Shown here: in pieces, positions 6,262-35,803 of the stretch | Layout: every line of letters starts with the position of its first letter | How positions within the stretch are numbered: the first letter of the stretch is position 1 | Source of the DNA: Octopus sinensis | Lineage: Eukaryota | Length of the DNA: 64,000 bases | Assembly (NCBI RefSeq): GCF_006345805.1 | Contig: NW_021833261.1 | Span: 14,258-78,257, forward strand | Direction: 5' to 3' | Program-made: the position numbers and the translations under genes | Notes under the pieces: model-generated | The model's input: only the letters and a program-made list of their open reading frames with translations | Databases searched by the model: none | What the model was told of the DNA's origin: nothing

Positions 6262-6292
6262 ATGTTGAGGAGGAATTATCTTCAAATTATTT
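6262..6292 (+). CDS. PAN-protein gene A, coding exon 1 (MLRRNYLQII, phase 1)
   Basis: ATG, 31 nt, then GTAAGT donor; conserved in copy B (54890-54920); possible upstream acceptor at 6234-6235. Confidence 0.7.
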
Positions 6293-6557
6293 GTAAGTAA
6301 ATGTTTTATTGTATTATTAATATAAGCTTTTATTTTTTAAGAGTTTAGCCATCGCGCCTGAGACCCTACAAGAACACACTTTATATATATATGAGTTCAG
6401 ATGAATATGGTACTTAAGTTGAGGGACCAGAATTTATTACGGTATTATCTATACAATTTCAAAGTAAGGTGATTAAAATCAAATTATGCAACAAGGATAA
6501 TCAAAAGTAATGCAATTTTCTTTTACTCTCTCTATTTTGGTAAACCTTTGGTATATA

Positions 6558-7073
6558 ACGTAAATCCTCGAGTATATCCGCATTTTTTTTCCTAAAATTT
6601 AAAGGTCAAAATACCTAGTGCGTACTGTATACGAGGTTAAAAATGAAAACTATTTTCTAAGCTATGTCCGAGTCTCTATTTGCTGTCTGGCTATGTTTAT
6701 TCAGACGCATTTTGTGATGTCGGGCGTGAAAATACCTTAAGCTAAACCTGAAAGCAATGAAGTCATAAAAGAATCATCCATAACTTGCAGTAAGCAACAT
6801 TTATTAAACGTTATTACTGTTATTTCTTTATTTTCTGCAAACAAAATGCACAAAAAAAGCTACACGTTCGCACAATGTTATATATACAATAATAATAAAA
6901 GACATTACCGTATACATGTTTACAAACCAAGGATGTTATATAGACCTCCTTGACTCAAGTTAGAGAAGGAGTGCATATTATACACAAGGTTTAGGTTTTT
7001 CAGAGGTACAGCACCCCCTCCCAAATCCCCTGCGTTTTATACTCAAAGGCGGACTATACTCGAGGAGTTAAGG
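6558..7073. mobile_element. pogo/Tigger-like MITE with TA target duplication
   Basis: Terminal inverted repeats CGTAAATCCTCGAGTATA.CCGC flanked by TA; also at 55289-55808. Confidence 0.7.
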
Positions 7074-8251
7074 TACTCCAAATATTCAAAGAAGTTTTAT
7101 CCTTATATTAAAATTTCATTCTTAATAATCTTCTTGATTACCCTAAATTTTAACTTTATACAATAAGACAATATTGTTTGAAAAGATCTTTAGAAATTAC
7201 TTGATTTATCTCTTTCTTAAATGGCTCTATTTTCCTGATCTTAGTATTTACAAGGGCCTTTATATAAATAACCCTTCTAAACAAGTACAACTAAGAAACT
7301 ATAAATATCATGAAGGAAGTAACAATATTAACTTCTTAAATCTATGATATAACCTTTATTTAGAAAAAAAGATTAGCGTAAAATATGATTGTTTCATAAC
7401 TTAAATATTCTTTTAGGTGACATCAAACATCAGACTTTTATTGATATTACCTAAATAAGTAAATATATAAATTTTAGTCTAATATATTTTGAATTATTAT
7501 ACTTTTTTCTAAAAATCTTCTCTATTGGTGTTAATAAGCTACATATACATTACCATAAGTTTTAGTAATTAAGCTATTTTATTTCCTTTTCTATGGTGTT
7601 TTGCCCTACTTGATCATTTTATTGTATTTCTTAATTATATTATAATTAGCCTTTATTTATAAAATTAATCTATTTTTTGTATCTCTATAAATTCATACTA
7701 TACTGGTATATTCATTACGTATAAAAAAACCTGCTTAGATTATAATTTTCTTTATATATAATTAACATGTTCCTTTGCCTCAATACTCCTTTATTAATAC
7801 CAGTTTATACCAATTAATCAATTTTTTATTCACCACTGAGTACCACAAGGAACAATCGTCATGTGGCCATATCTTAATAATGCTACATGCAGATGACCCG
7901 TTGACACAACAAGAATTCTCAATGAAGAGAGACGTTTGCATAACCAAATTCCTGCCAAAATGAAAGACTGCGGTGCGTGGAATCAATTTTAGGGTTTACA
8001 AATAAATGATCCTTCGTATTCCTTCTTGTTACTCCAACTTATGCAATTATACATGTATGTATGTATGTATGTATGTATGTATGTATATGTGTATGTGTGT
8101 TTTTATATGTATGCACATATATATACACATGAGTATACATATATATTAAAATGAATATACATATATGTATGTATACATACATTCATACATACACACATAC
8201 ACACATACATACATATGCATACATACATGCTTATATATATATACATATATA

Positions 8252-8665
8252 TATAGGGAAGCTTTATGAAAATAGACAAAAGACGAAGGCAGGTTTACGG
8301 AAATAAACAAAAGACGAAGGCAGGTGGAATACAAACAAACAATTGTATTAGTATGGCGCTCAGGAATATAAATAAAACTAGTCTTTAACGTTTCGAGCCT
8401 ACGCTCTTCAACAGAAAGATACACAGAGAAAAAACACAGAAAGAAGGAGAGAAAAAAAATATGCGTGCAGAGGCTAGCGAATCAACATGGCGATCTGATT
8501 TCGGCCAGAAGTCAAAGATCAAACGTGAGACGCAAGAGCGAAATTAGGGGAGATAATAGGGTTAAATGACCTCGCTCCAACATAAGAGTGTGTGTGTGTA
8601 TGAGAAGAGTGTGTGTGTGTGTGTATGAGAGAGTATTAGTGCGTATGAGAGGTCTGGACGTGTGT
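8252..8665 (-). mobile_element. Short repeat, probably a PLE terminal fragment (inverted copy at 18940-19285)
   Basis: Reverse complement of 18940-19285; contains TTGAAGAG..CTCGAAACGTT; absent from copy B. Confidence 0.6.
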
Positions 8666-8689
8666 ATGTATATATGATGTGATGTGTAA

Positions 8690-9060
8690 AGTCGTATGGT
8701 GTAGTGTAGAGAGAGGAGATGAGGGAAGAGGGGGAGGGGGAGGGGGAGGGGGAGGGGCGGGGGGAGAAATAAAGGGGAGAAGGAAAGGGGAGAAGAGGAG
8801 GTGGAAGGGGAGAAGAGGAGGTGGAAGGGGAGAAGGAAGGAGAGGAGAAGAGGGGGAGGGGAGATGAGGAGGGAGGATAGAGGGAGAGGGGGAGAGAGAG
8901 AGAAGGGGAGTGAGGGAGCAGAGAGAAAGAGGGAAGGGGAAGAGGGAAGAAGGGAAGAGGAGTAGGGAAGGATGAAGGCCTGAAGAGAAGGAGGGGTCGG
9001 GGGGAGGTTAGATGAGGAGGGGGAGAGGGGGGTTAGATGAGGAGGGGGGAGAGTTGAGAC
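8690..9060 (+). repeat. G/A-rich polypurine low-complexity tract
   Basis: GGGGA/GGAGA runs; potential G4 or triplex DNA. Confidence 0.85.
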
Positions 9061-10250
9061 CAAATGGCGTATATATATAAAATGGGTGAATATTAACATG
9101 ACCTAAATCTTCTGAACTATGCCTATCCCTTGTCCAGTGAGATCAAAATTAATCAGGGATCGTTGGTTGTTACTAGACTCCACGACACTCACCCTCAGTG
9201 TTCGTTGGTTGTCACTCATTTCCACGACACTCACTCTCTTGAGTTATTGCCTATTTTATGCCATCTCTATTACTTAAATCCAACAAGACTATTTTGAATC
9301 GTTGTGTAAAACTCTGGTAGTTTAGTATGGAAGAATTAGTTAATATAAATTTTATGTCGTAACTCTCTACGACAATTTTCTTTGAATTCTAAATGTACTG
9401 TAAATATTAAATGTACATAAATAAACTAATTTAGTAAATAATTTCTCTTTCTTCCTTTTCTTCAACCTGTTAATGAGATTTATTTCTGTATCCATGAAAC
9501 TGTTATTATAGCGGTGACCTTTCAACATGTACGTTTCAGCGTCTTGGTGTATAATTCATCACGGTGTTTACGCAGCCTGAGTTAAGATTTATGTATAGTG
9601 GTAACACTTATAGTTATGTTATAAGTGAATGGTTTATCACCATAGAATTCTACTCAGTAAACATCTATATTTATTACCTTTTCCAAGTCAAAAATACTCT
9701 ACACCAGATAATCTAACACAACCTTATATATTGGTGACAAGCCGACGTGGACTTAGAAAAGTCTACTCAGGACAATAATCACTCTGTAAATAAGATAGAA
9801 TCAACCCGTTATAAAAGTGGTAACTCGCCTTTATAAAAAGTATTACGAGCAAGTTATACGTAATACTTTCACTAAAGTCTCTGAAGTGTCTAGAATGTTC
9901 TCTTCCAAGAAATACTGATGCTTCTGATCTCGTTTGAAACAAATAACATTTCTTTTTCTTTCTTCCTCTTTTTCTATTTTTGCTCCTCTCTCTTTTTATC
10001 TCACCCTCACTCCTCCTATCCCTCTCTCTTCTGTTCCCTCTCTTTCTACCCCTCTCCAATTTGTCGCTCTCCCTCATTATTTCAATGGATAATTTTATGG
10101 TGATGTAGTGGTGGTCATCGCCGTATTTGTTACTGAATTATGCTTGTAGCACTTCTCTTTCATATTCCTTTCATCTTCATTCTTTGTAAATTAATGCTAA
10201 ACGTGAATATGAAATATGAAATTTTTTTCCAAAATAAATTTTCGTTGCAG

Positions 10251-10286
10251 TTCTCTTCTACATCTCACTGACATTTGGAAATGGAC
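10251..10286 (+). CDS. PAN-protein gene A, exon 2 (36-nt microexon, FLFYISLTFGNG; signal peptide h/c-region)
   Basis: ttttcgttgcag acceptor and GTAAGT donor; phase 1-1; identical exon at 58153-58188. Confidence 0.75.
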
Positions 10287-10842
10287 GTAAGTAAATTTAT
10301 ATCAAAATATAGACATATATCTATGAAAATTATGAAAATCACTACTCAAAACTTTAATTTATAAGTTCAGTGGAGGAAAATATTTTCCTTTCCTAATTAA
10401 ATTAGATGAAAAGAAAACTCAAGATAAATCTCGTATTATGACGAATTCAATTCTTAACATAATTTCCATTGGTGATAATTCAGTTTTCCGTCAGCTTGTA
10501 AGCATTTTGTTAAATAAAACAAAGTGCTGGTATTAGGGGACATTCTTTACAACAGACAACCGTTAAACATTATAGTATATAACTTGTGAATCATTTAAAT
10601 AATAGAATTAATTAAACAACATTTAAAACTCATTCGCAGTCATTTTCATTAAACAGATTATATATCCCAAGATCTTTGTACCTACACTATGGTAGTAACA
10701 ACTCTATCACTTCTTCCTGGTAAAAATATCAATGCTGATCCTCAAACATTTAATATTCTCTATCTTTATTATTATCTATTTTCACAATGTTTTATTTTCG
10801 TCTTCGTATTTTGGTTGTTTAATTTGCCTGGCTTTGTTACAG

Positions 10843-11100
10843 TTGACTATCTGAAGTATTTTATGAAAGTACCAGACGCCGGTCTGAAAGATGCCAAAAC
10901 ATTGATGACACTTGACGTGGATGCCTTCATCTGTTCGAAGAGTTGTTTTGAAACTTCTGCATGTAAATCCTTCGTGAGCAGAGCGATAAGTCCAAGCTGT
11001 ATTTTATACGAAGAAGACTCAACAGAGAGGATGCTAATAAGAGAATATAATACCCATTTTTATCAGTTGAGAAGATCTGTGCCGACCAAGTATAGAGACG
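10843..11100 (+). CDS. PAN-protein gene A, exon 3 (PAN/Apple-like domain 1)
   Basis: ttacag acceptor, gtaaac donor, 258 nt, phase 1-1; C-x3-C-x5-C-x-SF-x8-C-x-LY pattern. Confidence 0.85.
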
Positions 11101-11289
11101 GTAAACAAATTTGAATCGTTTTGTGTTTATTTCATTCCTTGACTTGTATTCTATGTTTTAGTCCAAAGAGAGACAATACTGTCGGCATTTGAAAATTGTC
11201 TGCGATTTCTCTGGTCGATGTAGATTAGCGTGTGTTGGAAAATAATTGTTTGTAGAGTTAAAGTTCTAATAAAGTTTTGAGTGATTTAT

Positions 11290-11660
11290 TTCTACGCTGT
11301 ACCTTGAAAAACAGCCGCAAGAGAGGTAAGCTCTGTTCATTGTGCAACAACATGAATCAAGTCAATTCCATCAGGAATCATCACAGAAATGTTATGATTT
11401 ATACAGAAGGTGGAACATGTAGAGATTCCCATTTGGTGTATGCGGCAGAATGCACGAAACACAATTCAATTTATGTTCGTTGCACAACAGAACAATTAAA
11501 CAAAATATTTAATGGACACAAATAGGATTTCAGACACAATAACAGTAGTTCGACAGAAGTTGCTGAACATTTTTCTTCAAGCGGCTGCAATTTTGAAGAA
11601 GATTTGAAAGTGCATATTCTCAGTGAATATTCTCAATCTTCTTCACTTTCACTTCTCAAA
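11290..11660 (+). mobile_element. Degenerate PLE GIY-YIG fragment
   Basis: GGTCRDSHLVYAAECTKHNSIYVRCTTEQLNKIFNGH resembles the PLE endonuclease. Confidence 0.65.
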
Positions 11661-11664
11661 GTGC

Positions 11665-12520
11665 ATGAGCTTACACATAGATTGGCAAACAAAATATTGG
11701 TCGGAAGTTTCCAACTGCATCCCCTTTACTTGAGCCCTTCTGGCATAGTACCGTTCTTCCTATTGTCATCCAGGCCATTATTTGGATGTCACTATTCGGT
11801 ACTTCGTCCATCTGTCTCGTAGTTTTCCTGTGCAGTGTTGTCAAGTTTTTAAGCCAAAAGCTCTGAACCCCATCTGGGCCAGGTGCTTCCGGATAGGAAT
11901 TTTCCTGCACTGATCTCTAATCAGCTCGGTTATTCTCAAATTCTTCTGCTGATACTCTCCATTCTCCTCTTTGAGTCTCTTTAACCACTCTGCTTCAGTT
12001 TCGTGTCGTTTCTCCTGAGACTATATGTTTGAATCGAAACTTTTTCTTTCTTCAGCATCCGGAACGGCTTTTTCACCCTTTTCTTTCCCAGTTCCTGATA
12101 GAGTATTTTCTGATTTTGTTCGAAAAGTCTGTTTAATCTGTACTGCTCAATTCTCTGTTCATATCACTTTAGTTTATGTGCTTTAGCTTCCAACCTCTGT
12201 TTTAATTCCTCAATCATATCATTGATTCCCTTTCTCTTCACCCTATACCTCCTCTTTAGCACAACATATTTCACTCACTGAACTTCATTTCTCTTTTTCC
12301 GTTCCAAAATATTAACATGGTTTCTGGTCTCGTTTATAGACTGCGTTATTCTCCTTCTCCACCTTCAGGTTACGTTGACATTTACCTTTGGCTTTCAAAT
12401 CTATCTTCCGGGCTATAAATTTCGAGATTGCATTTATCAGATTGTTGGTGTCCTGACATCACCGATGATATCATTTATCTTCCTGACCCATTCATTGAGT
12501 TTCATTCTGTCTACTTTTTA
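11665..12520 (-). mobile_element. R4/Dong-like LINE RT fragment
   Basis: APGPDGVQSFWLK...GNFRPIFCLP. Confidence 0.75.
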
Positions 12521-12929
12521 AAACATTATTAATATATATTATTATTGTCATTATTATTATAATTGTTGTTATTGTTAGTATTATTATTCATATACACTCA
12601 ACAGATAGGACTGTTGGAAAAGAAAATAATTCTAACATCGGGCTCGCACAAGTAGCTTTAGATAGCAAGAACCTTCCTAAGTATGCTAGCTTTCTTCAAT
12701 GACACTTTTCTGCAGCTGCACTATACTGGGTTTTATGCCTATTTCATCTCTCCATCTGTTCAGAAGAGAAAAACCTAAGCCACACAAACACACAATATGA
12801 AAACTAATACAACAACAGGATCAAACAAAACCCCATAACAAAACATTATCCCGCCCCCACAAAAACATGCAGCACGCACCACCCCACCAGCACAAAGTTG
12901 CAACAAGCGATGCAATAGAAAGTTGCTTG

Positions 12930-14490
12930 AAAGTTTCAGATGTCGAACATTAATAGTGGTGATGACGATGGTGACGAACGTTACCTTACCTCAGTTTATG
13001 AGAGACAGGAGTTTCGGCAGAAACTCAGATTGTAACAGCGAAAATGAAGCTGGTCCTTTAAGGGACGGCCTCTCGCTTGGCGGTGGATCAGTAAAGATGC
13101 AGACTGACCACAGCTGTCATTGTAATACAGCATCAGCAGATAATAGAGCAGGGAGGAGGAAGTGGACCAGCGAAGAAAACAGGATAGTGATACAATGCTA
13201 CTTAGAAAGTGAACTTAAAAGAAGGGGCTCTAGAAAACGGATGTTAACACTTTGGGTAGAGAAGGGTATGTTTAAAGTGACTGGATAGAGATTAGTTGAT
13301 CCAGCTAATGCTATTAGGAGGAGAAAGTGGATGACAGAATTGGAAGTAGAAAAGAACACAAGAGAATTAAGAGAACTGGAAAAGAAAGACGTGGCAGTGG
13401 GGAAGACAAACATCAGCATAAGAGATACAGCTCTAACCAAAGAAGAAGAGGAAGATCAGAAGATTTTAGATGCGTTGCCGGATGTAATAAGTAAAGAAGT
13501 AAGAAAAAGAACGCCAGCATTAAAAGACACTAACAGAAGGAAGCTGCTAGAAGTAACCAGGAAAATAGATTCTATTATCAGGAGGATAGATACTAAAAAT
13601 ATAGAAGACACTAACTAATTGGTTTATACAGGAGAGGTTGTAGTCACCAGAAGATTAGATATCTCACAGGGAAAGATTAGAAAAAAAAACAAATGTGGAA
13701 AAGGAGACTATAAAATAAAATGAAGACTTTAAGAGAAGATCAGAGGAGAATAGAAGCCTAGAAAACAAACAAGTTAGGAGAGGCAAGATGTAAATCTTGC
13801 CCCGATGAAAGATACTTAGTCAAAGAGAAAGGATATGGGACAAAAATAGAAGCGTTGAAACAGCGTATCGTAGCGGTAGCAGGCAAGTTCTCCAGATATC
13901 AGAAAAGAATAGATCAGTATCAACAGATTAGAGAATTTGAGACAGACCCGAGGAGATTTTATAACCAAATGAATAATAGAGAATGAAGTACTGAAGACGA
14001 GAAAGCTAAGTTCTGGTGTGATATTTAGGATATGCCAGTCAATCATAATGGAGATGTCGTATGGTTAAAGAAAGTGAGTGAGAAGTAGTCAGACCTAAGA
14101 TTTGTTTTATGTTTGATCCCCCTCAGTTTAGTATTAAGGAAGGCAAAAGCAGGGTATCAGTTCAGAATAGTATTGGAAAAATTACCCATCACGTGGATGA
14201 TCTGAAGCTTTTTAGCTTTTCAGTAAGAATGAAAATGAAATAGATTTCATAACAGGGTAAAGATATAGGCATGGAATTTGGCACAGATAAGCGTGCAATA
14301 TTAGTTATGAGAAGGGGGCAGGTGGTCAACAATGAAGGCATCCAATTATCAGATGGCCAACATTAAAATTATTTGAAAGGAAGAGAGAGTTATAAGTATC
14401 AAGAAGAATTAGAATCTGGCAGAGTTCTAACTACAGAAATGAAAACGAAGCTTAAAAAGGAGTAAATCAGAAGTGTGCGGAATTTAATGA
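12930..14490 (+). mobile_element. Degenerate, internally deleted R4/Dong-like LINE
   Basis: RRKWTSEENRIVIQCY N-terminal motif; VDDLKLF near 14190; many stops. Confidence 0.7.
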
Positions 14491-14568
14491 AGTCAAAGCT
14501 AAAAGGTCCGACTCTACCAGTCGAGATCGGTGGATCGGTGGATGTTCCGATTTAGAAATTTATAGAGG

Positions 14569-15270: not shown

Positions 15271-15459
15271 TATATATATATATATTACTTATATAGGATA
15301 AATTTCTTAATGAAAGGATAAATATGTAATTGTAAATACCTTGCAACCTTACAACGGCTGCGATAATTATTAACTGGAAATGGAACAGTAAACGTGTATC
15401 TTTATATTTACGTTGTACCTTGCCACCTCATTGTCTTTTTTTCAAGAGTTTCCCGTCTA

Positions 15460-16790: not shown

Positions 16791-16901
16791 AAAAGTATAA
16801 AAGTGAAACAATATATCATATAACAATATAGATGTTAGGTTCATAGGTATATATCTACATATATACATATACATGGATACGTATACACACATATACATAC
16901 G

Positions 16902-18169
16902 AGGGGCGTTCAATAAGTAATGCCCCTGACCCACTTCCCATAGCAGTAGAGCAACGAAACTTGGCACAGTTATTAGTCTTTTTCTACATAGGAACCACCC
17001 AGAGTTACGCATTTCACACATCGTTTGATGCAGCTCTGGAGACCATTTTTGTAGAAGATCCCGGCTTGGTCCTCCAACCACGACGTGACTTCAGAAATCA
17101 AGGCTGCATCATCTGGGAAACGCTTTCCTTTCAAAAACAACTTCATGGCTGGGAAGAGATGAAAATTAGAGGGTGCAGGGGGATGAGTTCATAGCCGTAC
17201 GCCTGTGCTTCTGATCTGGCGACACGCGAGTTGTGGACCGGAGCGTTGTCCTAAAGGAAGAGGATGCCTTTGCTGATCTTGCCCCGCCTCTTGATTTTGA
17301 TAGCTTCTCTTAACTTCCTCAAAAGTGAAGCATAATAGGCTCCTGTAATTGTGGCACCCTTTGGCAGGAAATCTGTCATCAGTACTCCGTCCTGGTCCCA
17401 GAAGACTGTGAGCATTACCTTGCCAGCAGAGGGCTGCACCCTTGCCTTCTTTGGAGGAGGTGAGTCATGGTGTGTCCACTGCATTGACTGGGCTTTGGTC
17501 TCTGGATCATAGTGATGGACCCAGGTTTCATCCTGTGTAATCAGTCTTTTGAAAAATTTTGACTCATCTTCTTGGCACATCTCCAAATTCATCCTCGAGC
17601 AATCGACACGTTTTTGCTTCTGGAAAGATGTGAGCAACCTGGGAATCCATCTGGCAGACACCCTTTGCATATGCAAATGGTCATGAATGATAGTTTCCAC
17701 AGACCCGGTACTAATCTTGACCTCATGGGCTATTTGGCGAATAGTTATGCGTCGATCTTCCAAAATGGCAGCCTCAACATGACGGACAGATGCCTCATCA
17801 ATGGCAGAAGGGGGCGACCAGATCTGGGAGCTGTTTCCACAGAGTTCCGACCATGTTTGAATTCACGATGCCAGCGTTTTACAAGGTCATATGATAGGGC
17901 ATCATCACCATAAGTTACTTTCATTTCATCAACAGTTTCCCGTGGTGTGCGTTCTTTCAAATACAAAAACCGGATCACTGCTCGACACTCAACAGGCTCC
18001 ATTTCACACTTGACTCAGTTCAAACACCTGTAAATCAGAAACCACAATTAGTTCAGAGCTGTAATTTGCCACTTATTTTATAAAGATATAAATAATTGTA
18101 CATGCAAAATTTCAGCTAAATCAAATAAATGCAAGTGGGTCAGGAGCATTACTTATTGAACGCCCCTCG
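16902..18169 (-). mobile_element. Full-length mariner (DD34D-type) transposon with inactivated transposase
   Basis: TIRs CGAGGGGCGTTCAATAAGTAATGC at both ends with TA duplication; WIPRLLT, ITQDETWVHHY, KVMLTVFWD; frameshift near 17750 and stop near 17251. Confidence 0.93.
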
Positions 18170-18208
18170 TACATATGTATATACGTACATATACATATGT
18201 ATACATAC

Positions 18209-18271
<63 letters not shown>

Positions 18272-18343
18272 CATATAATCACACACACATGTATATATAT
18301 ATATACACATACATATAATCACACACACATGTATATATATATA

Positions 18344-18879
18344 CAGGGTGTCCCCCAAAAATGTATACACTTGCTGCAACAGTCTGTCATGCCAAGCATT
18401 AGAGAGAACTTTGAACAGGAAGAGTTTTATTTCCAGCAAGATGGGGCACCTCCACACTACCATCGCGATGTTAGATCCTTTCTTGATGGGATCTTGCCAA
18501 ATAGGTGGATTGGACGGAGAGGTTTTGTCGAATACCCTCCACGTTCACCAGACATCACACCACTAGACTTCTTTTTAAGGGGATACCTAAAGGACAAAGT
18601 CTACGCACAGAAACCTGCAACAGTCGTTCAATTGAGGGCAACTATTGAACATGAATGTACGAATATCCCAAGGGAATTGTTCCATGATGTATGCCATTCC
18701 ATCGCTTCGCGTTGTCAGCAGTGTCTGGAGCAGAACGGACATCAGTTTGAGAACATGCGATAACAAGACAATAGAATGATATTTGTAAATTCTTTTACAT
18801 GTTGAAAATTATTCGAATTATAATAAACCCCAAATTTACAATTATTTAAGGTGTGTATACATTTTTTGGGGACACCCTG
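18344..18879 (+). mobile_element. Internally deleted DD41D (rosa/visitor-type) Tc1-mariner element
   Basis: TIRs CAGGGTGTCCCC.AAAAATGTATACAC with TA duplication; 41 residues between the D of QQDGAPPH and the D of TPLDFF. Confidence 0.88.
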
Positions 18880-18892
18880 TATATATGTATAT

Positions 18893-18924
<32 letters not shown>

Positions 18925-24329: not shown

Positions 24330-24367
24330 GAGACACCCTTATTATTATAATTATTATTATTATTATT

Positions 24368-24429
<62 letters not shown>

Positions 24430-24475
24430 TGTTGCTGTTGCTATTATTACTATCATCATCATCATCATCATCATC
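24330..24475. repeat. Compound trinucleotide microsatellite (TAT)(TGT)(CGT)(CAT)
   Basis: Directly visible. Confidence 0.95.
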
Positions 24476-24614: not shown

Positions 24615-24845
24615 GAAGATGTCCTTTGGATTTGATTTACAAAACTGTTCTAAGTTCAAACAATCAGTTGGGTGTCTTTAATGTTTCTAATTACAAACAA
24701 TGTCTGCATAAATGCAAAGTAAAACCAAATTGCCGGTCGTTTGACTATTACTTTAATAAGAAAAGATGCCAGTTGTCAACTAAAGATCATACAATATTTC
24801 AGTTGCGTTTTCAAAAGGATTACATTTACACCGAAATAAACAGAG
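24615..24845 (+). CDS. PAN-protein gene A, exon 4 (PAN/Apple-like domain 2)
   Basis: ttcttcttcttacag acceptor, GTAAGG donor, 231 nt, phase 1-1; CLHKCKVKPNCRSFDYYFNKKRCQLS. Confidence 0.85.
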
Positions 24846-24989
24846 GTAAGGGCGTCATTTTCTTGTTTTTATTTATTTATTTTGTTGGAATTATACACAG
24901 TCAGTTGGACGAGATTAGGCACCACCTTCAAAAATATATCGATTGGTTAAGTCTAACTTCATATAAAGGTACGGACACATTACCAAATT

Positions 24990-25320
<331 letters not shown>

Positions 25321-25344
25321 TCATACGTACAGATAACTACTAAA

Positions 25345-26976: not shown

Positions 26977-29900
26977 ATTGTCATTTACTTTTAATCTGCA
27001 TGTTTGATGCAATCACCTGCCGGGGCACACCCAGCGCCCTAGGGCAAGTGAAGGTTAAGAGTTGTTGAAATATAGCTGAAAGCTTGGGGAGGGGAAGTAG
27101 AGAAATATCTCCATGTAATACAAACACAAACATTTACATTGATAGGGTTTTTCTAAGGATGTGGGCAGTACTTGTTAGCACAATCTTTTGGATTTCCTTG
27201 AGACATGGTTTTCCAGGGATATTGTCTAGGTGTTTCTGACATCCCTTTTTTATCATACCTAGAGCACCTACAATAACAGGAACAGTTTTTGTTTTAAGAT
27301 TCCACATCCTCTGTATTTCGATTTCCAGGTCCTTATATTTACTAAGTTTGTCAAATTCCTTGACAGATACATTTTTATCAGTGGGGACGCTTACTTCTAT
27401 TAGTCTGCAGGTATTTTCTTCCCTGTCTTTAACAATTATGTCTGGTCGATTAGCCTTGATCGTTCTGTCAGTGTTGACTGGAAAATCCCAGAGGATGGTG
27501 ACATCTTTACCTTCAACAACTGGCTGAGGGTGGTGTTCATACCAGTTAGCAGGAGTGTCGGATTTGTAGTGTTTACATATCTTCCAATGTATATACTGTC
27601 CTACCCTATCGTGGCGATTTTTGTATTCGTTTGGTGTCAGCACAGGACATCCCGAAACGAGATGGTCTATTGTTTCGTCAAATGTGTCACAGAATCTGCA
27701 TTTAGGGTCAGTACCGTTTCGGAGAACGTTAGCCTGGTAATTTCTGGTAAACAAGCTTTGATCTTGTGCTGCCATTATGAAGCCTTCAGTCTCTGCTTTC
27801 AATCCAGAACTCTTCAGCCACTGATGGGTTGTTGCTTGGTCTACATCAGCATTTTGGCTTCGGAGAATGTATTGTCCATGCAGAGGCTTCTGGCTCCACC
27901 GCCTCTCAATTTGATTCTGCCCGTTCTTTTTTGCAGTCTGCCTGATTCGCTTTGCTTGCTTGGTAGCAGTGGTTTCTGGCTCTTCACCTGATTCAAGGTT
28001 AATACCTAGTTCCCTTTCGAACTTATAAGCTTCCTTGACAATAGAATGCAGCTTTTTGCTGCTTTCGTGTTCACACACAAGTCGCAGCATCCAGTCTTTT
28101 GTACTAGATAGGTACCTGTTCATTCCTACAGTAGAGGTCTTATAGCACAGCTCTAATTGCATCATTCCTCTCCCCCCGCTGCTTCTAGGTAGGTACAAGC
28201 GGTCTACATCTGCCTTAGGGTGGTGCATGCTCCTGGATGTCAGTAACTTTCTTGTCTTCCTGTCCAAGCGTTGGAGTTCCGTAAGGTTCCAGTTAATGAT
28301 GTTAAAACTGTACTGGACTACTGGAAGTGCCAGGGTGTTAATGGCCTCAATGCAATTTTTGGAGTTGAGTTCAGTCTTCAGTACAAGCCTTATTCTCCTA
28401 TAGTACTCCTTTCTTATTTTTTCCTTCATAGTAGCATGATGTATACCATCTCCTTCGTTGATTCCTAGGTATTTGTAACTTTCTTGTGGGTCAAGTTCCT
28501 TGATGGTAGTGTCAATATCTAATTTAACAGAAGCTGTTTGCCTGAGCTTGCCTCTTACAAAAGTTGCTTTAGCACACTTATCAAGGCCAAAATCCATTCC
28601 GATATCATTGCTAAACTCTTTAACAGTTGTTAGCAGCCCTTCTAGCTCTTGGTCATTCTTGGCAAACAGCTTTAGATCGTCCATATAAAAAAGGTGGTTT
28701 ATTAACTTGCTAAAAACTTTGTACCCATATCTGGCACTATCCAATTCGTTTGAGAGTGGGATCAGTGCCATGCAAAAAAGTAATGGAGAGAGGGAGTCAC
28801 CTTGAAAGATGCCTCGTTTGATGTTGATGCTGTTGGACTGGCTCATCCCATTACTATGGCTTAGAAAGAGACGTGTGTTCCACATGGTCATGCTATTCTC
28901 TAAGAATTTGAGACGACAGGGGAGATCTTGTATATCTCAAGGGCCTTGAGTATCCATTTATGTGGGACACTGTCATACGCTTTCCTGTAGTCTATCCATG
29001 CCATACTCAGGTTTTTGTTTTTGCTCCGGCAATTCTCTACAATCATTCTGTTTATGAGCAATTGGTCTTTGCACCCATAAGAGTTTCTTTTACAACCTTT
29101 TTGAGCTTGTGGAAGGATAGAATTTTGTTCAAGGAAAGCGTACATTCTCTCCGTTATTATGGATGTGAGGATTTTGTAGGTGGTGTTGAGACATGTTATT
29201 GGCCGGTAATTCTTTGGGTTTTTTGTGTCTTCGGTTTTAGGTAATAGGTAGGTGGTTCCTTCAGTCAGCCAAGCAGGTATTTGCTCTGGGTTCTGAATGA
29301 CATCAGACAGAGATGCAGCGAGATGTTCGTGTACCTCTGTCAAACAATTCAGCCAGAAGTTAGGGATCCGATCCAGTCCTGGGGTTTTCCATTTGTGAGC
29401 CTTCCTAAGGACACACCTTAGCTCCTCTATTCCTATTGCTTCCCATTTCTGTTCTTCAAGTTCATCCAGTCTCTCTTTCTCACGTTCTATCCAGTCAGCC
29501 TCAGCATTAAACTCTTTTTCGTTGCTCCATACCTTCTTCCAGAACTCCTCCACTTCCTCAATCTTAGGTGGATCTTCTATGTGTATTTTATTTTTGCCAA
29601 TTTCCCTATAAAATGTCTTTGCATCTGTCTTAAAAAATTTATTTTGTCGATAAATTTGTTTCTTTGTCATACCTTCTAAGCCGTTGAGCTTTCAACTGTA
29701 TCCGTTGTTTCAACAGTTCCTTAGTTGCAGGGAGGTTTATGAGATCTTTGATTTTATATTTTTGCTTGATTTTTCTAGCTTTTCTCGGCTTAATATTCAC
29801 TCCTCTAGCAAGCTCATCGAGAACTGAAACATCCGCCCGCAGAGATTCAATCTCTTTTTGTATCGCTACTTTCCACTTAGGAGGTTCATTGACATGCCTG

Positions 29901-30748
29901 GCCTTTTTCTTTGTCATCTTAATACCTAGTTGGGTAGTTACTACTTTAGCAGTGGAATAAATGAGATTATTTAAGGTTGTCAAATCATTCCCCTTATTTC
30001 TTAAGATCTGTCCTAGGGCAACGTTATATGTCATGATTGTGTTGTTATTTCTTGTGCCATTTGAAAACTTTGGTAGTGGTTCTCTATTAACCATGTCAGT
30101 GAGCTCAATCTTGCCGAGTTCTCTCTTAATGTCCACTTTTGCTTCCATAATCTTTTCTCTATTATTCACCTCAAATTCTATGTCATATCTATTTTGGTTT
30201 TCTTGAGGAAGGTCTACGTTCTCCTCTTTTTTCAAATCTCTCGTCTTCGCTATTCTTTGTTTAACTTCCCCATTGGGAAGTTGATTTGCCGCTTGTACAC
30301 TGGCTTCTGTGCTACTGTTACCTATTTCGTCTACATTGTTGCTGTTTTCTTTTGGTCTACCATGAGCTATTAGTGTCCTAATTTTGTCAATTTCAGCGTC
30401 AGTTAGTCTTTTGTTTTTAATTATATCTCTGCGTACATTACTTAATTTATTTGCGTCTATATATCTACGTACGTCATCGCCTACTGAATTTCTCCATGAG
30501 ATGTATGTTTGTACACTGAGGTTATTGTTTGGGTTTAGTTGGGCTGTATAAAAAGCTTTCAACACATCTCTATAGTCCTCTCTGGTCCATTTTATACGTT
30601 TTGCTTTAGGTGGTGTTTTTGGTGGTGTCACTACAAGTCCAGAGTTAGAAGTATTCTGGTTCTGGTCACCTGGTAGATCGTCTTTTTGAGAGTTTGTTCC
30701 AGCAGCAAACTTTTCGACCCCAGTCTGGTTCCCTACTGGGTAACGCGG
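26977..30748 (-). mobile_element. Near-intact R4/Dong-clade RLE non-LTR retrotransposon flanked by (AAT)n
   Basis: Three consecutive ORF pieces (30631-29639, 29670-28900, 28891-27134) with RT (GIFQGDSLSP, YMDDLKL), CCHC knuckle, RHD and PDII..IEV endonuclease motifs. Confidence 0.95.
27134..28891 (-). CDS. RT C-terminal half, zinc knuckle and RLE endonuclease of the near-intact LINE
   Basis: 585-aa ORF with all of these motifs; becomes contiguous with the upstream ORFs after indel correction. Confidence 0.9.
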   Translation of the reverse strand: MTMWNTRLFLSHSNGMSQSNSINIKRGIFQGDSLSPLLFCMALIPLSNELDSARYGYKVFSKLINHLFYMDDLKLFAKNDQELEGLLTTVKEFSNDIGMDFGLDKCAKATFVRGKLRQTASVKLDIDTTIKELDPQESYKYLGINEGDGIHHATMKEKIRKEYYRRIRLVLKTELNSKNCIEAINTLALPVVQYSFNIINWNLTELQRLDRKTRKLLTSRSMHHPKADVDRLYLPRSSGGRGMMQLELCYKTSTVGMNRYLSSTKDWMLRLVCEHESSKKLHSIVKEAYKFERELGINLESGEEPETTATKQAKRIRQTAKKNGQNQIERRWSQKPLHGQYILRSQNADVDQATTHQWLKSSGLKAETEGFIMAAQDQSLFTRNYQANVLRNGTDPKCRFCDTFDETIDHLVSGCPVLTPNEYKNRHDRVGQYIHWKICKHYKSDTPANWYEHHPQPVVEGKDVTILWDFPVNTDRTIKANRPDIIVKDREENTCRLIEVSVPTDKNVSVKEFDKLSKYKDLEIEIQRMWNLKTKTVPVIVGALGMIKKGCQKHLDNIPGKPCLKEIQKIVLTSTAHILRKTLSM

Positions 30749-30769
30749 TTATTATTATTATTATTATTA

Positions 30770-30840
<71 letters not shown>

Positions 30841-33415
30841 CATTTTTCTCTTTCTTCAAATTTTCTTCCGTTTCTCGCCGAGTGTTTTCCGTACACCTTG
30901 GGCAGAGAAGCTCATTGTATGCATTCCCAGATTACACACGCAAATTCACAGGTAAAATATATATTTAAAAAATTAATAAATAAATAAATTCATGAATAGA
31001 TGTTGTTTTCACAGCGATAATGCCCTTCTCGGTACATGAGCCGTTCCAGTTAACACGATTTTTTGCACTTCATGTAGGAATGGTAAGCCTGGTATCATTT
31101 TCAAATAGGTTTCAGTACCTTTTTTTATCATTCCTAGAGATCCTACAATCTGGTACTGTAGTCGCCTTGAGATGCCACATTTTTTCAATTTCTATTAGCA
31201 AGTCTTTATATTTACTGATCTTGTCAGATTCTTTCGCCGCTATATTGTGATCGCAAGGAATACTCATATCAATTAATAAACACGCCTTTTTCGTCTAATC
31301 TTTTATAATAATATCCGGTTTATTAGCTTATATATATTATATATATTAGCTTAGCTTATATATTCTGCACCCTGAGATTAGGTGGTCTATTGTTTCAATC
31401 TTATCGTTACAGAATCGGCATTTTGGGTCAGCTCCATTTTTCATCACATTGGCTTGGTAGTTCCGGGTTAATAAGCTTTGGTCTTGAGCAGCTAATACGA
31501 AACCTTCACTCTCTGCTTTTAGCCCTGAGCTTCGTAACCATTGATGCGTATGTTTCTGGTCGACATCAGCTTGTTTGTTACAGGTCACATACTTGCCATG
31601 CAGAGGTTTCTGTTCCCATCTGCTAGCTAATTTTTCATGTGCTTTTGTCTTTGCAAGTAATTTTATTTTCTTTGCAGCAGCAGTTGGCGCATTTCCTTCA
31701 GCCTGATCAATCTTGTAGGTATCTAAGAGATCAGTAGCGAATTTTTTGCTCTCTTTGAAAATAGAGTGATGTTTTTTCGGTCTTTCATGTTTTCCAACAA
31801 GTTTTAGCATCCAATCGTTGGTTGCTTCATGGTATTTGACCAGTCCGATTGTGGTGGCTTTGTACGTAAGTTCAAGCTGGTTCAAATCTCGACCTTCCTG
31901 AGCTCTGGGAAGGTAAAGGCGATCCACGTCTGCCTTTGGATGGTGCATCTTATTACAAGTCAGTAGCTTGCGGATTTTTCTGTCAATTTTCATTATTTCA
32001 CTGGTATTCCAGTTTAGCACATTGAAGCTATAAAGAACAACTGGTACTGCAAAGGGATTTATAGCTTACACCTTATTATATGCATTCAGCTCAGACTTCA
32101 GGAATGCTCGAACTCTTCTAAAACATTCCTTCCTAACCTTCTCTTTCATGCTTGCATGCTGGATACTAGAGCCTTCATTTATTCCTAGGTATTTATAGGT
32201 TTGTTCCTGCTCAAGTTCCTTTATTACTGTTTCGACATCTAATTCGATTGAACTTAACTTTATCAATTTCCCTTTCTTAAAAGTGGCTTTGGCACACTTT
32301 TCAATGCCGAACTCCATCCCAATATCATCACTGAATCCTTTCACGGTATGTAGTAGTCCTTCAAGCTCTTCATCATCTTTGCCATATAGATTTAAATCAT
32401 CCATATAAAAATAATTGGCTTATTTTCTTGTTGTCAATTTTGTAGCCATATCCTATTCTATTCAGTTCACTTGAGAGTGGTATTAGTGCTATGCAGAAAA
32501 TTAGTGGCGAAATGAGTCATCTTGGAAAATGCCACAGTTTATGCTAATGTTGTTTGAGCGCAATACTCCATTAGAATGATATAATTGAAGCTTTGTGTTC
32601 CATAGTTCCATAGGTCGGCGATTGAGATGTCTTCCTATATCCGTTCTTGTAGATTTTTGTAGGCATCTTGGGTGCGTTTGATCCACTCTGCATTTTCATT
32701 GCATGGTTTCTCATCACTCCAGATCCCTTTCCAAAAGTTTTCAACTTCTTCTATTAGGGGTGGATTTTCAATGGTTACTTTTTCGTTCCTTAATTCCCTG
32801 TAAAATGATTTGACATTGGATTTTAACATTATATTTTGCTTGTAGTATTTGATTCTTTTCTCAAATCTGCGTATTCTCTGAGCTTTTGCTTGAACTTTTT
32901 GTTTAAGTGTTTCTTTCGCTGACCTTCTCTTGTTGAGTGTCCATATTTTCTCAAAATCTTCCTGCCTTTTCTTGATCTTACATCATTTCCAAAGATTATC
33001 TCAGTTAATATTGATATCTCCCTTCGCAATGATTCAATTTCAGTTTCAATTCTACTCCTCCTGTTTGATTTTCTTTTCCAATTTGGTATTGTTGGCTTTT
33101 GGGGTGTTAAACAGAGTCTTTCGATTACCTTAGCAACAGTGTAAATAATTTCATTTAACTTATTATTAAGCTTGGGTTTATTTGTTGTATGATTTCTTGT
33201 GTAACGCAGTTGCCAATTTTTATCTGTGTTTTATGTTGGTGTGCATTTGAGAGTTTATGAAGTGGTTCTCTATCATTCATATTTGTATGCCCTATAACTG
33301 CAAGCTCATTCAGAATTTCCTGCTTCATTTCAGTGATAGATACGCTGCTTCTTACTGCAAATTCCCTTCCAAAATTTCTTTGTTTGTTAGGTGATGCAAC
33401 AGAAGGGATTCAGCA
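30841..33415 (-). mobile_element. Internally deleted R4/Dong-like LINE (same family as 41770-44575)
   Basis: RT and RLE pieces; 3' UTR ends in (AAT)n at 30840; about 540 bp missing near 32610 relative to the 41770 copy. Confidence 0.88.
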
Positions 33416-33839
33416 TGGAAGATTTAATCCACGCACACACAGCATACACACACATACCGCACACACACACGCACACACACACACACACACATAGCTCTCA
33501 CATATACACATGCATTGTTTGCGGCTGATGCACCAGCAAGCACAAGAACTCGAGAATCCGCTGAAGCCACAAACTTCCAGTCCAACAGGAAGTTAGAAGG
33601 AAATCTCACGTGCCATTAATGGTAACCAGTGTGACATATTTTCTTCCTCTTATCGAAAGTCCTGCAATCTTTCATGGTTGTTAATTCTTCTCATTTGATT
33701 AAGTTTTAAAAAAGAAAATTAACATAGACATAATAACACAATCTACACGCTCTCTCACCCCTCCACCCCCTTCTTTAAATAAAAATCATGAAAATGAATC
33801 CTCTGGGTTTTTTTCTCTGATATACATTGCATGCAATGC

Positions 33840-34065
33840 ATTGGTTTCAAACTTTGGCACAAGGCCAGCAATTTCAGGGGTGGTGTTAACAGATTACATC
33901 GGCCTCAGTATCCAACTGCTACCTGGTTTATCGGCCCCGAATGGATGAAAGACAAAGTCGACCTCGACGGTATTTGAACTCGGAACGTAAAGACGGTCGA
34001 AATGCTGCTAAGCATTTCGTCCGGCATGCTAACGATTCGGTCAGTCCGCCGCTTTAGCATTGCAG
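33840..34065 (-). mobile_element. tRNA-derived SINE
   Basis: Similar to 460-685; B box on the minus strand. Confidence 0.75.
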
Positions 34066-35606
34066 ATAACATATTAAAATTAATTCCGATCTATTCTACA
34101 GGCTTCTCTGAACTGTTCCAGAAAAAAAATCATTTTTCCTACTCCAATGCGGACTAATTATATTTGTAAGACATATACACCGGACTCCTTACCAAGAATC
34201 GAAACCTCGATCTTCACGCTTGTTTATATTGTTCTCGCCGTTTATGTTTAGAATTCATTCGTTTTACCTATTTAAATCGCCACCATTTTAGATGAGACAG
34301 GGTTTAATCTTGTTAACCCAATCCGGTCTATTGTCAATGGTCTAACTTGACTTTAGTACTGCAATAAATTCGAGATACCAAGAGAAAAATATTCTCTTTC
34401 CTCTGCAACTTCCAAACAGTTAACTATGACACCTTCTCGGGAGCTTCGCCCCATTTATCCCCCTCAAGTTAGGGATCACTATTAACAACTGCCATGGTAA
34501 TAGATTATCCATCAAAACTAACTAAATTTTGTGTTTACTTCCCACTCGTCGCAGTTGCAGAACCGCGTAAGTAAAATCTACAGCAGTTCTTTGCAGTGCA
34601 TCCAGAAATATTATCTAAGCAATGCACAGTCTTTCGCCAACTTGTCACATCTCTACGTGTTACAAGCAACTTGCTACATCGTGCCTGTTACGCCTTTCCC
34701 GTTACAATTATACCGTTATACATACAAAGACATGTTTGAAGTACATTTCGAAAGAAGCTAGAATCTTTATAAACGTCAGTCCCTTCATACCTGGGGCCTT
34801 GAGTTATTACTAGAAATAAAGGATAGTAAATAAAACTCAACATATATTAAAGAAGTAATGATTTCTTATATAAAATTGTCTTATATATAAATAGGGAAGT
34901 CGATTGCATTAAAGAGATTAGGATTTCTTGATTAATATTAAAGAAATCACGAAAGATATTAAGACCATCAGAAGAATAAGAAACTATTTTGATTCCATTT
35001 CAGAACTTTGGAATGATTTCAAACAGTCAAATACACTGGACAAGATTAACTCTGTGGGATGTGGTATAAGAGTTTTCGACTCTTATTATTTCGTTGACAG
35101 TAAGACCTATTTTTGCTTATTTTTTTGTGTGCTTTTTTTTTCTTTTTCTTGTTTCTCATCTTTAATTCATTGATCTTCTGTCTCCAGTTCTTGTCGAAAA
35201 AATAAGAGAAATTAATGTCGCTCTCTTCTTCATCGCATTATTTCTTCTACTTACAGTCCTAATTCTTAGTTAAATATATTAGCAGTAAATTTATAATTCC
35301 TCTCCCCGAGATACCCAGCCACATGCCACTTCTCCTTCTCCCGTCATACATGCTATTACACCAACCAGATCACATCCTGCATCAATTATTATCCCCAATC
35401 TTTCATTTCTAGATTATACAACATTCAGGATCTCACTCCATACTCGCACTACTCTAAAGATGTCCAAACGGAACATTAATAAAATCGATCTATCGAATCA
35501 ATAGACCATATCCATTCGTTTCCCTTGTACCTTCCAACGAAGTGAAACAGATTCATTTATGTTGTTATATTTCTTGTGTTTTCTCTTGCTTTTTTTTCTA
35601 CTGCAG

Positions 35607-35803
35607 AAAAAGATATTAAGGATTTGACAACTTATTCAACATTTTCCTTCAAACAAAATCCATATCACAACCTTATTACCAAGGCCCAAATGGATGCTCA
35701 CTCGGTTCTGGATTGTTCACGTTTATGTATGATATCTTCTACATGTACCGCCTTTTCATATACTGACACTAAGTGTTTACTAAAGAAACTTGTTGACCTT
35801 TAA
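35607..35803 (+). CDS. PAN-protein gene A, terminal exon 5 (PAN/Apple-like domain 3)
   Basis: ttttttctactgcag acceptor, phase 1; CSRLCMISSTCTAFSYTDTKCLL; TAA at 35801. Confidence 0.7.

What the first reader, a model, noticed from the sequence alone, without database searches (positions are those of the whole stretch)
6262..35803. Hidden five-exon gene for a secreted protein with three PAN/Apple-like domains
Five exons with canonical AG/GT sites splice without a frame break (31+36+258+231+197 = 753 nt). The product is MLRRNYLQIIFLFYISLTFGNG|LDYLKYF...RDGRCPLD...INREKDIK...KKLVDL*, 250 aa. It has a basic N-terminus, a hydrophobic core and G-N-G before a likely cleavage site, then three C-x3-C-x5-C-x-[SA]F-x6..8-C-x-L modules typical of PAN/Apple folds. 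No catalytic or transmembrane segment is visible, so a soluble multivalent binder (lectin, immune, venom or gamete role) is inferred. The ORF track shows only misleading fragments of it.
Basis: partly seen in the sequence, partly recalled or inferred. Interest (0 to 1): 0.8.

Follow-up and report, generated by a model that had tools for sequence, protein, structure and literature searches.

The report
Octopus secreted triple-PAN/Apple protein gene

Summary
All five exons, their AG/GT sites, the 753-nt sum and the 250-aa product reproduce exactly. The gene is real. Its product matches 11 Octopus "uncharacterized / Apple domain-containing" proteins at E down to 4e-102. Each of its three modules passes Pfam PAN_1's curated cut-off on its own.

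The model is incomplete. All 10 related gene copies I examined in three Octopus species have it, with the same boundaries. Its segment is also conserved in Argonauta and in distant paralogues. The six-exon product is 282 aa and aligns end to end with O. sinensis XP_036366256, also 282 aa.

A good model of that homologue (pLDDT 82) best matches factor XI/prekallikrein apple discs and apicomplexan apple lectins. Full-length relatives occur only in octopods.

The window holds a tandem array: gene 1, a dead exon-4 relic, and the first three exons of a second copy.

Secretion and multivalent binding are inferred. No ligand, tissue or expression data could be obtained. Verdict: a new member of a known kind, of low to moderate interest.

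The parts
6262..6292 (+). Gene 1 exon 1: ATG and the first 10 codons of the signal peptide (MLRRNYLQII), donor |gtaagt
   Evidence: Homologues P0001-P0004 and P0006-P0009 start with the same M-L-x-x-x-x-x-Q-x-I.
10251..10286 (+). Gene 1 exon 2 (36 nt): hydrophobic core and G-N-G end of the signal peptide (FLFYISLTFGNG)
   Evidence: The peptide is near-identical in all full-length homologues. It is the only strongly hydrophobic segment of the protein.
10843..11100 (+). Gene 1 exon 3 (258 nt): PAN module 1 and the invariant linker YQLRRSVPTKYRDG
   Evidence: PAN_1 scores 26.2 bits against a cut-off of 21.4 on this module alone. The 258-nt length and both boundaries are identical in 9 copies.
24615..24845 (+). 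Gene 1 exon 4 (231 nt): PAN module 2, the most divergent part of the family
   Evidence: PAN_1 scores 41.3 bits. Boundaries are conserved. Mean dN is 0.48 and dS 0.86, against dS 0.18-0.43 for the other exons.
35004..35099 (+). It encodes (E)LWNDFKQSNTLDKINSVGCGIRVFDSYYFVD(K), the N-terminal extension of module 3 with the conserved Cys205.
   Evidence: Found by tblastn with homologues. Sequence and splice sites are, and the phase is kept. It is present and open, with the same cag|/|gtaaga sites, in all 10 other gene copies examined. It has the lowest dN/dS of the four exons compared, 0.31. The segment is conserved in Argonauta and distant paralogues.
35607..35803 (+). Gene 1 exon 6 (197 nt including TAA): core of PAN module 3 and the C-terminus ...CLLKKLVDL*
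   Evidence: PAN_1 scores 22.9-23.8 bits. P0001 and the O. sinensis L004 copy have the same C-terminus.
35912..35917 (+). AATAAA, the likely polyadenylation signal, 109 nt after the stop codon
   Evidence: by sequence only. It has not been tested.
44988..45153 (+). Dead relic of an exon 4 between the two genes. It is 166 nt instead of 231. A 65-nt internal deletion removes the C-x3-C-x5-C core and shifts the frame. The splice sites are still present.
54890..54920 (+). Gene 2 (tandem paralogue) exon 1, MLRRNYIRII
   Evidence: The promoter-proximal 200 nt are about 93% identical to those of gene 1.
58153..58188 (+). Gene 2 exon 2 (36 nt), identical peptide FLFYISLTFGNG
58747..59004 (+). Gene 2 exon 3 (258 nt), PAN module 1, 89% amino-acid identity to gene 1. 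No later exon of gene 2 was detected between here and the window end at 64000.

Best explanation
The window carries an intact six-exon gene (6262-35803, + strand, introns of 0.5-13.5 kb full of transposon debris). It encodes a 282-aa precursor: a 22-residue signal peptide followed by three tandem PAN/Apple modules. The mature protein is about 30 kDa with pI about 8.9 and 14 cysteines. It is one unit of a tandem array of an octopod-restricted gene family. The DNA comes from an Octopus close to O. sinensis/vulgaris. Shown here: the exons, splice sites, reading frame, domain identity, family membership and array structure. Inferred: the protein is cleaved after G-N-G and secreted. Each module then folds into the disulfide-stapled helix-on-sheet PAN fold. 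The three modules together act as a soluble, multivalent binder of an extracellular glycan or protein ligand, as other PAN/Apple proteins do. At most it is a minor isoform.
For: The exon model reproduces and extends. The 282-aa product aligns without gaps at any junction to O. sinensis XP_036366256, which is also 282 aa, at 70% identity. It likewise aligns to O. bimaculoides XP_014769852 and others. Exon lengths and boundaries are conserved in 9 copies: 258, 225-231, 87-96 and 191-197 nt, with the same acceptor and donor sequences. Two more O. sinensis copies also carry all four exons. Each module passes the PAN_1 gathering score on its own. The family profile hits the apple lectin SML-2, TgMIC4 and the plasminogen PAN domain in the PDB. 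An AlphaFold model of the 70%-identical homologue (pLDDT 82, pTM 0.72) shows a strands-helix-strands pattern three times. Its best Foldseek hits are factor XI/prekallikrein apple domains (E about 2e-8), then TgMIC4, SML-2, plasminogen and the HGF N domain. The only hydrophobic stretch is residues 6-19, and no 19-residue window reaches TM level. AATAAA lies 109 nt after the stop.
Against: I could obtain no transcript evidence for this copy. No identical protein is in the collection, so expression is unproven. No SignalP run was possible, so the cleavage site rests on the -3/-1 rule. Two annotated relatives, P0002 and P0020, skip exon 5, so the skipped form may exist. dN/dS is high (0.56-0.83 in exons 3, 4 and 6), which fits weak constraint as well as adaptive change. 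The ligand and tissue are unknown, and no paper on the family was found.
Confidence: 0.78

Rival explanations
1. The reader's five-exon, 250-aa product is the main product, and exon 5 (35004-35099) is normally skipped in this copy.
For: Skipping keeps the frame, since 96 nt is 32 codons. Two annotated relatives lack the segment although the exon is intact in at least one of their genes: P0002 with L002 33250-33345, and P0020. The C-x3-C-x5-C core of module 3 lies wholly in exon 6 and still passes PAN_1 alone, at 23.8 bits.
Against: The exon is open, with strong conserved splice sites, in all 11 copies examined. It has the lowest dN/dS of the four exons compared, 0.31. Its peptide, with the GC Cys, is conserved in Argonauta and in 20-27%-identical paralogues. 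Most full-length models include it. Both models that skip it are otherwise aberrant: P0002 leaves exon 6 early for an unrelated tail, and P0020 has a non-family N-terminus. Skipping leaves 13 cysteines, an odd number.
Confidence: 0.12
2. Gene 1 is an intact-looking but silent or decaying duplicate in a birth-and-death array, with no function of its own.
For: No matching protein or transcript-derived sequence is in the collection. The array visibly sheds dead pieces: the exon-4 relic at 44988-45153, and a frameshifted exon 6 in the O. sinensis copy upstream of LOC118766702. Module 1 has lost the first Cys that many paralogues carry. Exon 3 evolves about as fast as its flanking intron.
Against: All six exons are open and all ten splice sites are canonical and conserved. 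The ATG context, the promoter-proximal sequence (93% identical to gene 2) and a poly(A) signal are present. The missing module-1 Cys is also absent from annotated P0002 and P0003 and from the genomic exon 3 at the P0010 locus. Exons 5 and 6 show dN/dS of 0.3-0.6.
Confidence: 0.1
3. The PAN exons are part of a larger multi-domain gene, for example one of the giant multi-PAN proteins of Octopus, and the short model is a fragment.
For: Octopus genomes do encode very large multi-PAN proteins that hit the family profile: P0017 (2643 aa) and P0018 (1730 aa).
Against: Start codon, signal peptide, stop codon and total length match a dozen 220-310-aa relatives. A second gene start with the same ATG context follows 19 kb downstream. 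No further PAN-like exon was found in the window by tblastn, apart from the dead relic.
Confidence: 0.02

Closest known systems
Octopus 'uncharacterized protein LOC118766713 / LOC118766702 / LOC118761179' (O. sinensis), LOC106868906 (O. bimaculoides), 'Apple domain-containing protein' A0AA36FDP1 (O. vulgaris), Ahia01_000849900 (Argonauta hians)
   Same: They share the signal peptide, three PAN modules in the same order, the invariant linker YQLRRSVPTKY.DG.CP, the six-exon structure with the same boundaries, gene spans of 10-40 kb, and tandem arrays. The closest genomic region is O. sinensis chromosome CM016875.1 at about 22.01-22.06 Mb, which is 92-95% identical and colinear.
   Different: No annotated protein exceeds 70% identity over the full length. 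Module 2 (exon 4) is only 35-62% identical to any relative. Relative to the sampled O. sinensis copies this gene is a mosaic: the 5' part is nearest LOC118766702, exon 4 is nearest LOC118761179, and the 3' part is nearest the unannotated copy upstream of LOC118766702.
Factor XI / plasma prekallikrein apple-domain disc (PDB 7qox, 6i44, 5i25)
   Same: These are the best structural matches, at Foldseek E about 2e-8 with probability 1.00. They are several Apple modules in tandem used as a protein-binding platform.
   Different: They have four apple domains plus a serine-protease domain, which is absent here. Canonical Apple modules have six Cys with a C1-C6 bridge, whereas the window protein has 4, 5 and 5 Cys and no C6. 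The global TM-score is only about 0.25, so the domain packing differs. Sequence identity is 12-18%.
Apicomplexan microneme apple lectins: Sarcocystis muris SML-2 (2yil) and Toxoplasma MIC4 (4a5v)
   Same: These are the closest solved structures by sequence profile (E = 9.7e-5 and 0.01) and strong Foldseek hits. They are small secreted proteins made only of tandem apple modules, and they bind galactose multivalently.
   Different: They have two (SML-2) or six (MIC4) modules. They are of protist origin and have no detectable orthology. Their sugar-binding residues were not compared here, so lectin activity for the octopus protein is only an analogy.
Plasminogen N-terminal PAN domain and the HGF/SF N domain
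   Same: Single-module superpositions of 76-87 residues give rmsd 1.9-4.3 Å. They share the same four-Cys PAN core.
   Different: In those proteins a single PAN module is fused to kringles and a protease-like domain. Their ligands are heparin, receptors and intramolecular contacts.

Membership tests
PAN/Apple domain superfamily (Pfam PAN_1 PF00024 and clan) | Profile-HMM match above the curated gathering score | tested here: met
   The whole protein scores 68-69 bits against a cut-off of 21.4. The modules alone score 26.2, 41.3 and 22.9 bits.
PAN/Apple domain superfamily (Pfam PAN_1 PF00024 and clan) | Four core cysteines in the pattern C-x3-C-x5-C...C (two nested disulfides) | tested here: met
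   The pattern is present in all three modules at C53/57/63/75, C138/142/148/160 and C254/258/264/274. Actual disulfide formation cannot be tested here.
PAN/Apple domain superfamily (Pfam PAN_1 PF00024 and clan) | Helix packed on an antiparallel sheet (PAN fold) | tested here: met
   The AlphaFold model of the 70%-identical homologue P0001 has pLDDT 82. Its Foldseek hits at probability 1.00 are FXI, prekallikrein, MIC4, SML-2, plasminogen and HGF N.
Canonical Apple domain (factor XI / prekallikrein type) | Six cysteines per module with a third C1-C6 disulfide | tested here: not met
   The window modules have 4, 5 and 5 Cys, and none has a C6 after the core. Some paralogues do have a sixth Cys in module 2, for example P0001, P0008 and P0016.
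Canonical Apple domain (factor XI / prekallikrein type) | Apple modules followed by a trypsin-like protease domain | tested here: not met
   There is no other Pfam domain, and the protein ends 8 residues after the last core Cys.
Octopod small secreted triple-PAN family (LOC118766713-like) | Full-length colinear similarity, including the signal peptide and the invariant inter-module linker | tested here: met
   E = 3.8e-102 and 70% identity over 282/282 aa. All 23 invariant columns are kept.
Octopod small secreted triple-PAN family (LOC118766713-like) | Six coding exons with conserved lengths, phases and splice sites | tested here: met
   Exons 3-6 were compared in 9 copies from three species plus 2 more O. 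sinensis copies. Exons 1-2 were compared with gene 2 and with L001/L002.
Octopod small secreted triple-PAN family (LOC118766713-like) | Tandem-array genomic context | tested here: met
   Window 1560-11291 is duplicated at 47593-59211 with 85-95% identity. A second gene start and a relic exon are present. O. sinensis and O. vulgaris loci also hold adjacent copies.
Secreted protein (classical signal peptide) | Positively charged n-region, hydrophobic h-region, small residues at -3/-1, and no other membrane segment | tested here: inconclusive
   MLRRN, then YLQIIFLFYISLTF, then G-N-G fits the rule. The highest 19-residue Kyte-Doolittle mean is 1.14, at the N-terminus only. No dedicated predictor or experiment was available.
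Apple-domain lectins (SML-2 / MIC4 type) | Galactose-binding pocket residues and measured sugar binding | not tested
   Only overall sequence and fold similarity were obtained. Pocket residues were not compared.

The most novel reading that the evidence does not exclude
The octopod-only triple-PAN family might be a lineage-specific recognition repertoire, whether immune, mucosal, reproductive or salivary. In that reading the array keeps a homogenised 5' half (promoter, signal peptide, module 1) while maintaining old, highly divergent module-2 cassettes that are shuffled between copies, so each copy would bind a different ligand. The window copy, with a module 2 unlike any annotated protein, would then be a new specificity.
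Probability: 0.2. Interest if true: 0.55.

Novelty: new member of a known kind. Interest (0 to 1): 0.25.

Why it matters
The practical value is annotation. This is an intact, apparently unannotated copy of a rapidly evolving secreted-protein family, and the corrected model has six exons and 282 aa. It also shows that existing database models of the family are inconsistent: several are chimeric, truncated or skip an exon. Biologically, the family is restricted to octopods, tandemly amplified and weakly constrained. Genes like that often work at the interface with microbes, prey or mates. No experimental work on it was found, so it is a reasonable but not urgent target for expression and ligand studies. 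It does not reveal a new kind of domain, mechanism or genetic system.

Tried and rejected
I used the 70%-identical, equal-length homologue P0001 instead.

2. The first AlphaFold run, on a 14-row alignment, gave pLDDT 42 and was discarded. Adding Argonauta and distant paralogues raised it to 82.

3. Seven literature searches on octopus/cephalopod plus Apple/PAN terms, LOC numbers and accession numbers found nothing relevant. One more was rejected for syntax.

4. I considered that exon 4 is hypervariable because of exon-confined diversifying selection, and rejected it. Its dS is also very high (0.86, with omega about 0.56). Its upstream intron flank is about as diverged as the exon (74% against 71% identity). 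That points to an old cassette and homogenisation of the rest of the gene. The downstream-flank figures are unreliable, because microsatellites made the alignments fail.

5. The window versus LOC118766702 pair in exon 3 shows 12 nonsynonymous to 1 synonymous change. The counts are too small to claim positive selection.

6. I could not establish the species or the exact orthologue. The best region, O. sinensis chr CM016875.1 at about 22 Mb, is only 92-95% identical, whereas O. sinensis and O. vulgaris orthologues are essentially identical in protein. The window is therefore either a paralogous, unannotated segment of one of these species or comes from a third, related Octopus.

7. P0001 itself is not on record in the contig index.

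8. I first thought exon 5 encodes the first strand of module 3. The model does put a strand at residues 212-216, but only at pLDDT 60-78 and without coordinates to inspect, so I claim only an N-terminal extension.
Full report
**Observation.** The window is AT-rich (about 36% G+C), rich in microsatellites and full of transposon fragments. All have AG acceptors and GT donors (mostly gtaag). They sum to 753 nt and translate to the quoted 250 aa. The three C-x3-C-x5-C-x-[SA]F-x6..8-C-x-L motifs are present.

**Is it real?** Yes. Pfam PAN_1 matches the product at E = 2.9e-19 in three stretches. Each module alone exceeds the curated cut-off, at 26.2, 41.3 and 22.9 bits against 21.4. A search of 5.8 billion proteins returned 11 hits, all from Octopus sinensis, O. 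bimaculoides or O. vulgaris. They are named 'uncharacterized protein LOC...' or 'Apple domain-containing protein', with E from 3.8e-102 to 7.6e-56 and 53-70% identity. They begin with the same MLxxxxxQxIFLFYISLTFGNG and most end with ...CxLKKLV(DL). So the start, the stop and the short overall size are correct.

**The missed exon.** tblastn places this segment at window 35003-35104. The sequence shows ttccatttcag|AACTTTGG...GTTGACA|gtaagacc, which makes an exon at 35004-35099. It is 96 nt long and in phase with both neighbours.

The six-exon CDS is 849 nt and encodes 282 aa. It aligns end to end with O. sinensis XP_036366256, also 282 aa, at 70% identity, and with other full-length relatives.

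I fetched seven related loci: five from O. sinensis, one from O. vulgaris holding two copies, and one from O. bimaculoides. Every gene copy has this exon open. It is 96 nt long (87 nt in O. bimaculoides) and has the same acceptor and |gtaaga donor. That includes the gene whose annotated model, P0002, skips it. Exons 3, 4 and 6 likewise keep their lengths (258, 225-231 and 191-197 nt) and their boundaries.

Exon 5 has the lowest dN/dS of the four exons compared (mean dN 0.135, dS 0.43, ratio 0.31). Its peptide, including the Gly-Cys, is recognisable in Argonauta hians and in O. bimaculoides paralogues that are only 20-27% identical. Skipping it keeps the frame but leaves 13 cysteines instead of 14. 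The five-exon product is therefore at best a minor isoform. Two database models do skip the exon (P0002, P0020), but both are aberrant elsewhere.

**What the protein is.** The only hydrophobic segment is residues 6-19. It is preceded by MLRRN and followed by G-N-G, which fits a cleavable signal peptide. No other 19-residue window approaches transmembrane hydrophobicity. This is a rule-of-thumb call, not a predictor result. The mature chain is 260 aa, about 30.5 kDa, with pI about 8.9 and one N-x-S/T site.

A profile of the family hits the apple lectin SML-2 of Sarcocystis (2yil, E = 9.7e-5), Toxoplasma MIC4 (4a5v) and the plasminogen PAN domain among solved structures.

A shallow alignment failed (pLDDT 42). 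A 22-row alignment including Argonauta and distant paralogues gave pLDDT 82 and pTM 0.72, with a strand-strand-helix-strand-strand(-strand) pattern repeated three times. Foldseek against the PDB returns factor XI and prekallikrein apple discs first (E about 2e-8, probability 1.00). Next come MIC4, SML-2, plasminogen, the HGF N domain and AMA1. Single-module superpositions have rmsd 2-4 Å, while the global TM-score is low (about 0.25), so the inter-module packing is different or uncertain.

The modules have 4, 5 and 5 cysteines and lack the sixth Cys of canonical Apple domains. They are best called PAN modules with an extra N-terminal Cys in modules 2 and 3. Whether Cys111 and Cys205 pair with each other is an inference I could not test.

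**Distribution.** An exhaustive HMMER scan of 1.84 billion representatives found 225 proteins at E <= 1e-3, but only 36 at E <= 1e-10 and 8 at E <= 1e-30. Every full-length or near-full-length relative whose source could be read is from Octopus or Argonauta. Weaker hits are generic multi-PAN proteins, including giant Octopus ones, an annelid and a cnidarian. No paper on the family was found.

**Genomic context.** The window is a piece of a tandem array. Segment 1560-11291 (upstream region plus exons 1-3) recurs at 47593-59211 with 85-95% identity. This gives a second gene whose exons 1-3 are intact: 54890-54920, 58153-58188 and 58747-59004. No later exon of it was found before the window end.

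Between the two genes lies an exon-4 relic at 44988-45153. It still has its splice sites, but a 65-nt internal deletion removes the cysteine core and shifts the frame.

The closest fetched region is O. sinensis chromosome CM016875.1 at about 22.01-22.06 Mb, around LOC118766702. It is colinear with the window at 92-95% identity. Other clusters on the same chromosome, at about 12.9-13.0 and 14.5 Mb, are about 86% identical. O. sinensis and O. vulgaris orthologues are essentially identical in protein. The window is therefore either an unannotated paralogous segment of one of them or comes from another related Octopus. I could not decide which.

**Evolutionary pattern (a side result).** Exon 4 (module 2) is far more diverged than the rest, with mean dN 0.48 and dS 0.86. 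The other exons show dS of 0.18 (exon 3), 0.43 (exon 5) and 0.29 (exon 6). Its upstream intron flank is about as diverged as the exon (74% against 71% identity). Exon 3 sits in well-conserved flanks (91% and 84%) yet is itself only 87% identical. This argues for a mosaic history: the 5' half was homogenised and an old module-2 cassette was retained. It argues against selection confined to exon 4. Overall dN/dS of 0.56-0.83 in exons 3, 4 and 6 indicates weak constraint or some adaptive change. The sample is too small to separate the two.

**Mechanism.** Exons, frame, domains, family and array are shown. The rest is inferred from established knowledge of PAN/Apple modules, namely the factor XI/prekallikrein-kininogen platform, the MIC4/SML-2 galactose lectins and heparin binding by the HGF N domain. 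On that basis the protein is secreted and acts as a soluble multivalent binder of extracellular glycans or proteins. I put about 0.78 on this overall statement. I put much less on any particular physiological role.

**Verdict.** This is a correct catch of a real, apparently unannotated gene. The model needs one more exon, and the gene belongs to an already catalogued though unstudied octopod family. It is a new member of a known kind, with interest about 0.25.

Noticed in passing
window 44988-45153 (+): An orphan exon-4 relic lies between the two genes. Acceptor and donor are intact, but a 65-nt internal deletion removes the C-x3-C-x5-C core and shifts the frame. This is evidence of birth-and-death turnover in the array.
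   Followed up: yes
window 54890-59004 (+): A second, tandem paralogue. Its exons 1-3 are intact and module 1 is 89% identical in amino acids. No later exon of it was found before the window end. Its module 1 keeps the extra N-terminal Cys (KVPNCALKD) that gene 1 has lost (KVPDAGLKD).
   Followed up: partly
window 11065-11100 and 24615-24624 (residues 96-112 of the product): The most invariant stretch of the whole family is the linker between modules 1 and 2, YQLRRSVPTKY.DG.CP. It includes a dibasic RR, and the model is least confident there (pLDDT about 62). Its conservation is unexplained. It could be a processing site or a docking motif. It is absent from Argonauta and the distant paralogues.
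   Followed up: no
window 10843-11100 versus 24615-24845, and related loci L001-L007: Divergence is mosaic. Exon 4 and its flanks are old (dS about 0.86, flanks about 74% identical). The promoter, exons 1-3 and exons 5-6 are much more alike between copies. Gene 1 is nearest three different O. sinensis copies in its 5' part, its exon 4 and its 3' part, which suggests conversion or recombination within the array.
   Followed up: partly
L002 2646-2831 (O. sinensis CM016875.1, upstream of LOC118766702): An unannotated family copy whose exon 5 is intact but whose exon 6 is frameshifted at its start (KKLMI*QLIQLF). The same frameshifted peptide appears in annotated model P0009. Several database models of the family are chimeric or truncated (P0005, P0006, P0015, P0020).
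   Followed up: partly
window 17254-17763 (-) and 18197-18760 (+), intron 3: A mariner-type transposase fragment (Pfam Transposase_1, E = 1.5e-26). A 94%-identical copy lies in an intron of the O. sinensis homologue. An adjacent ORF with no Pfam hit looks like the transposase C-terminus.
   Followed up: partly
window 27137-30631 (-), 31349-32020 (-), 41401-43935 (-): Two or three decayed non-LTR retrotransposon copies (RVT_1, zf-RVT). One fills much of intron 4, and another lies in the intergenic region. The copies at 31696-33341 and 41784-43948 are 91-92% identical.
   Followed up: partly
window 4203-5171 (+): A 323-aa ORF, 1.1 kb upstream of the gene 1 ATG, has a sub-threshold GIY-YIG nuclease match (21 bits against a cut-off of 22.6). 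It is possibly the endonuclease tail of a Penelope-like element.
   Followed up: no
window 49467-50273; also 24350-24475, 24989-25303 and 45342-45745: A 383-bp unit is repeated 2.1 times at 99% identity. Long tri- and tetranucleotide microsatellites directly flank exon 4 and the exon-4 relic. They made the downstream-flank alignments unreliable.
   Followed up: no
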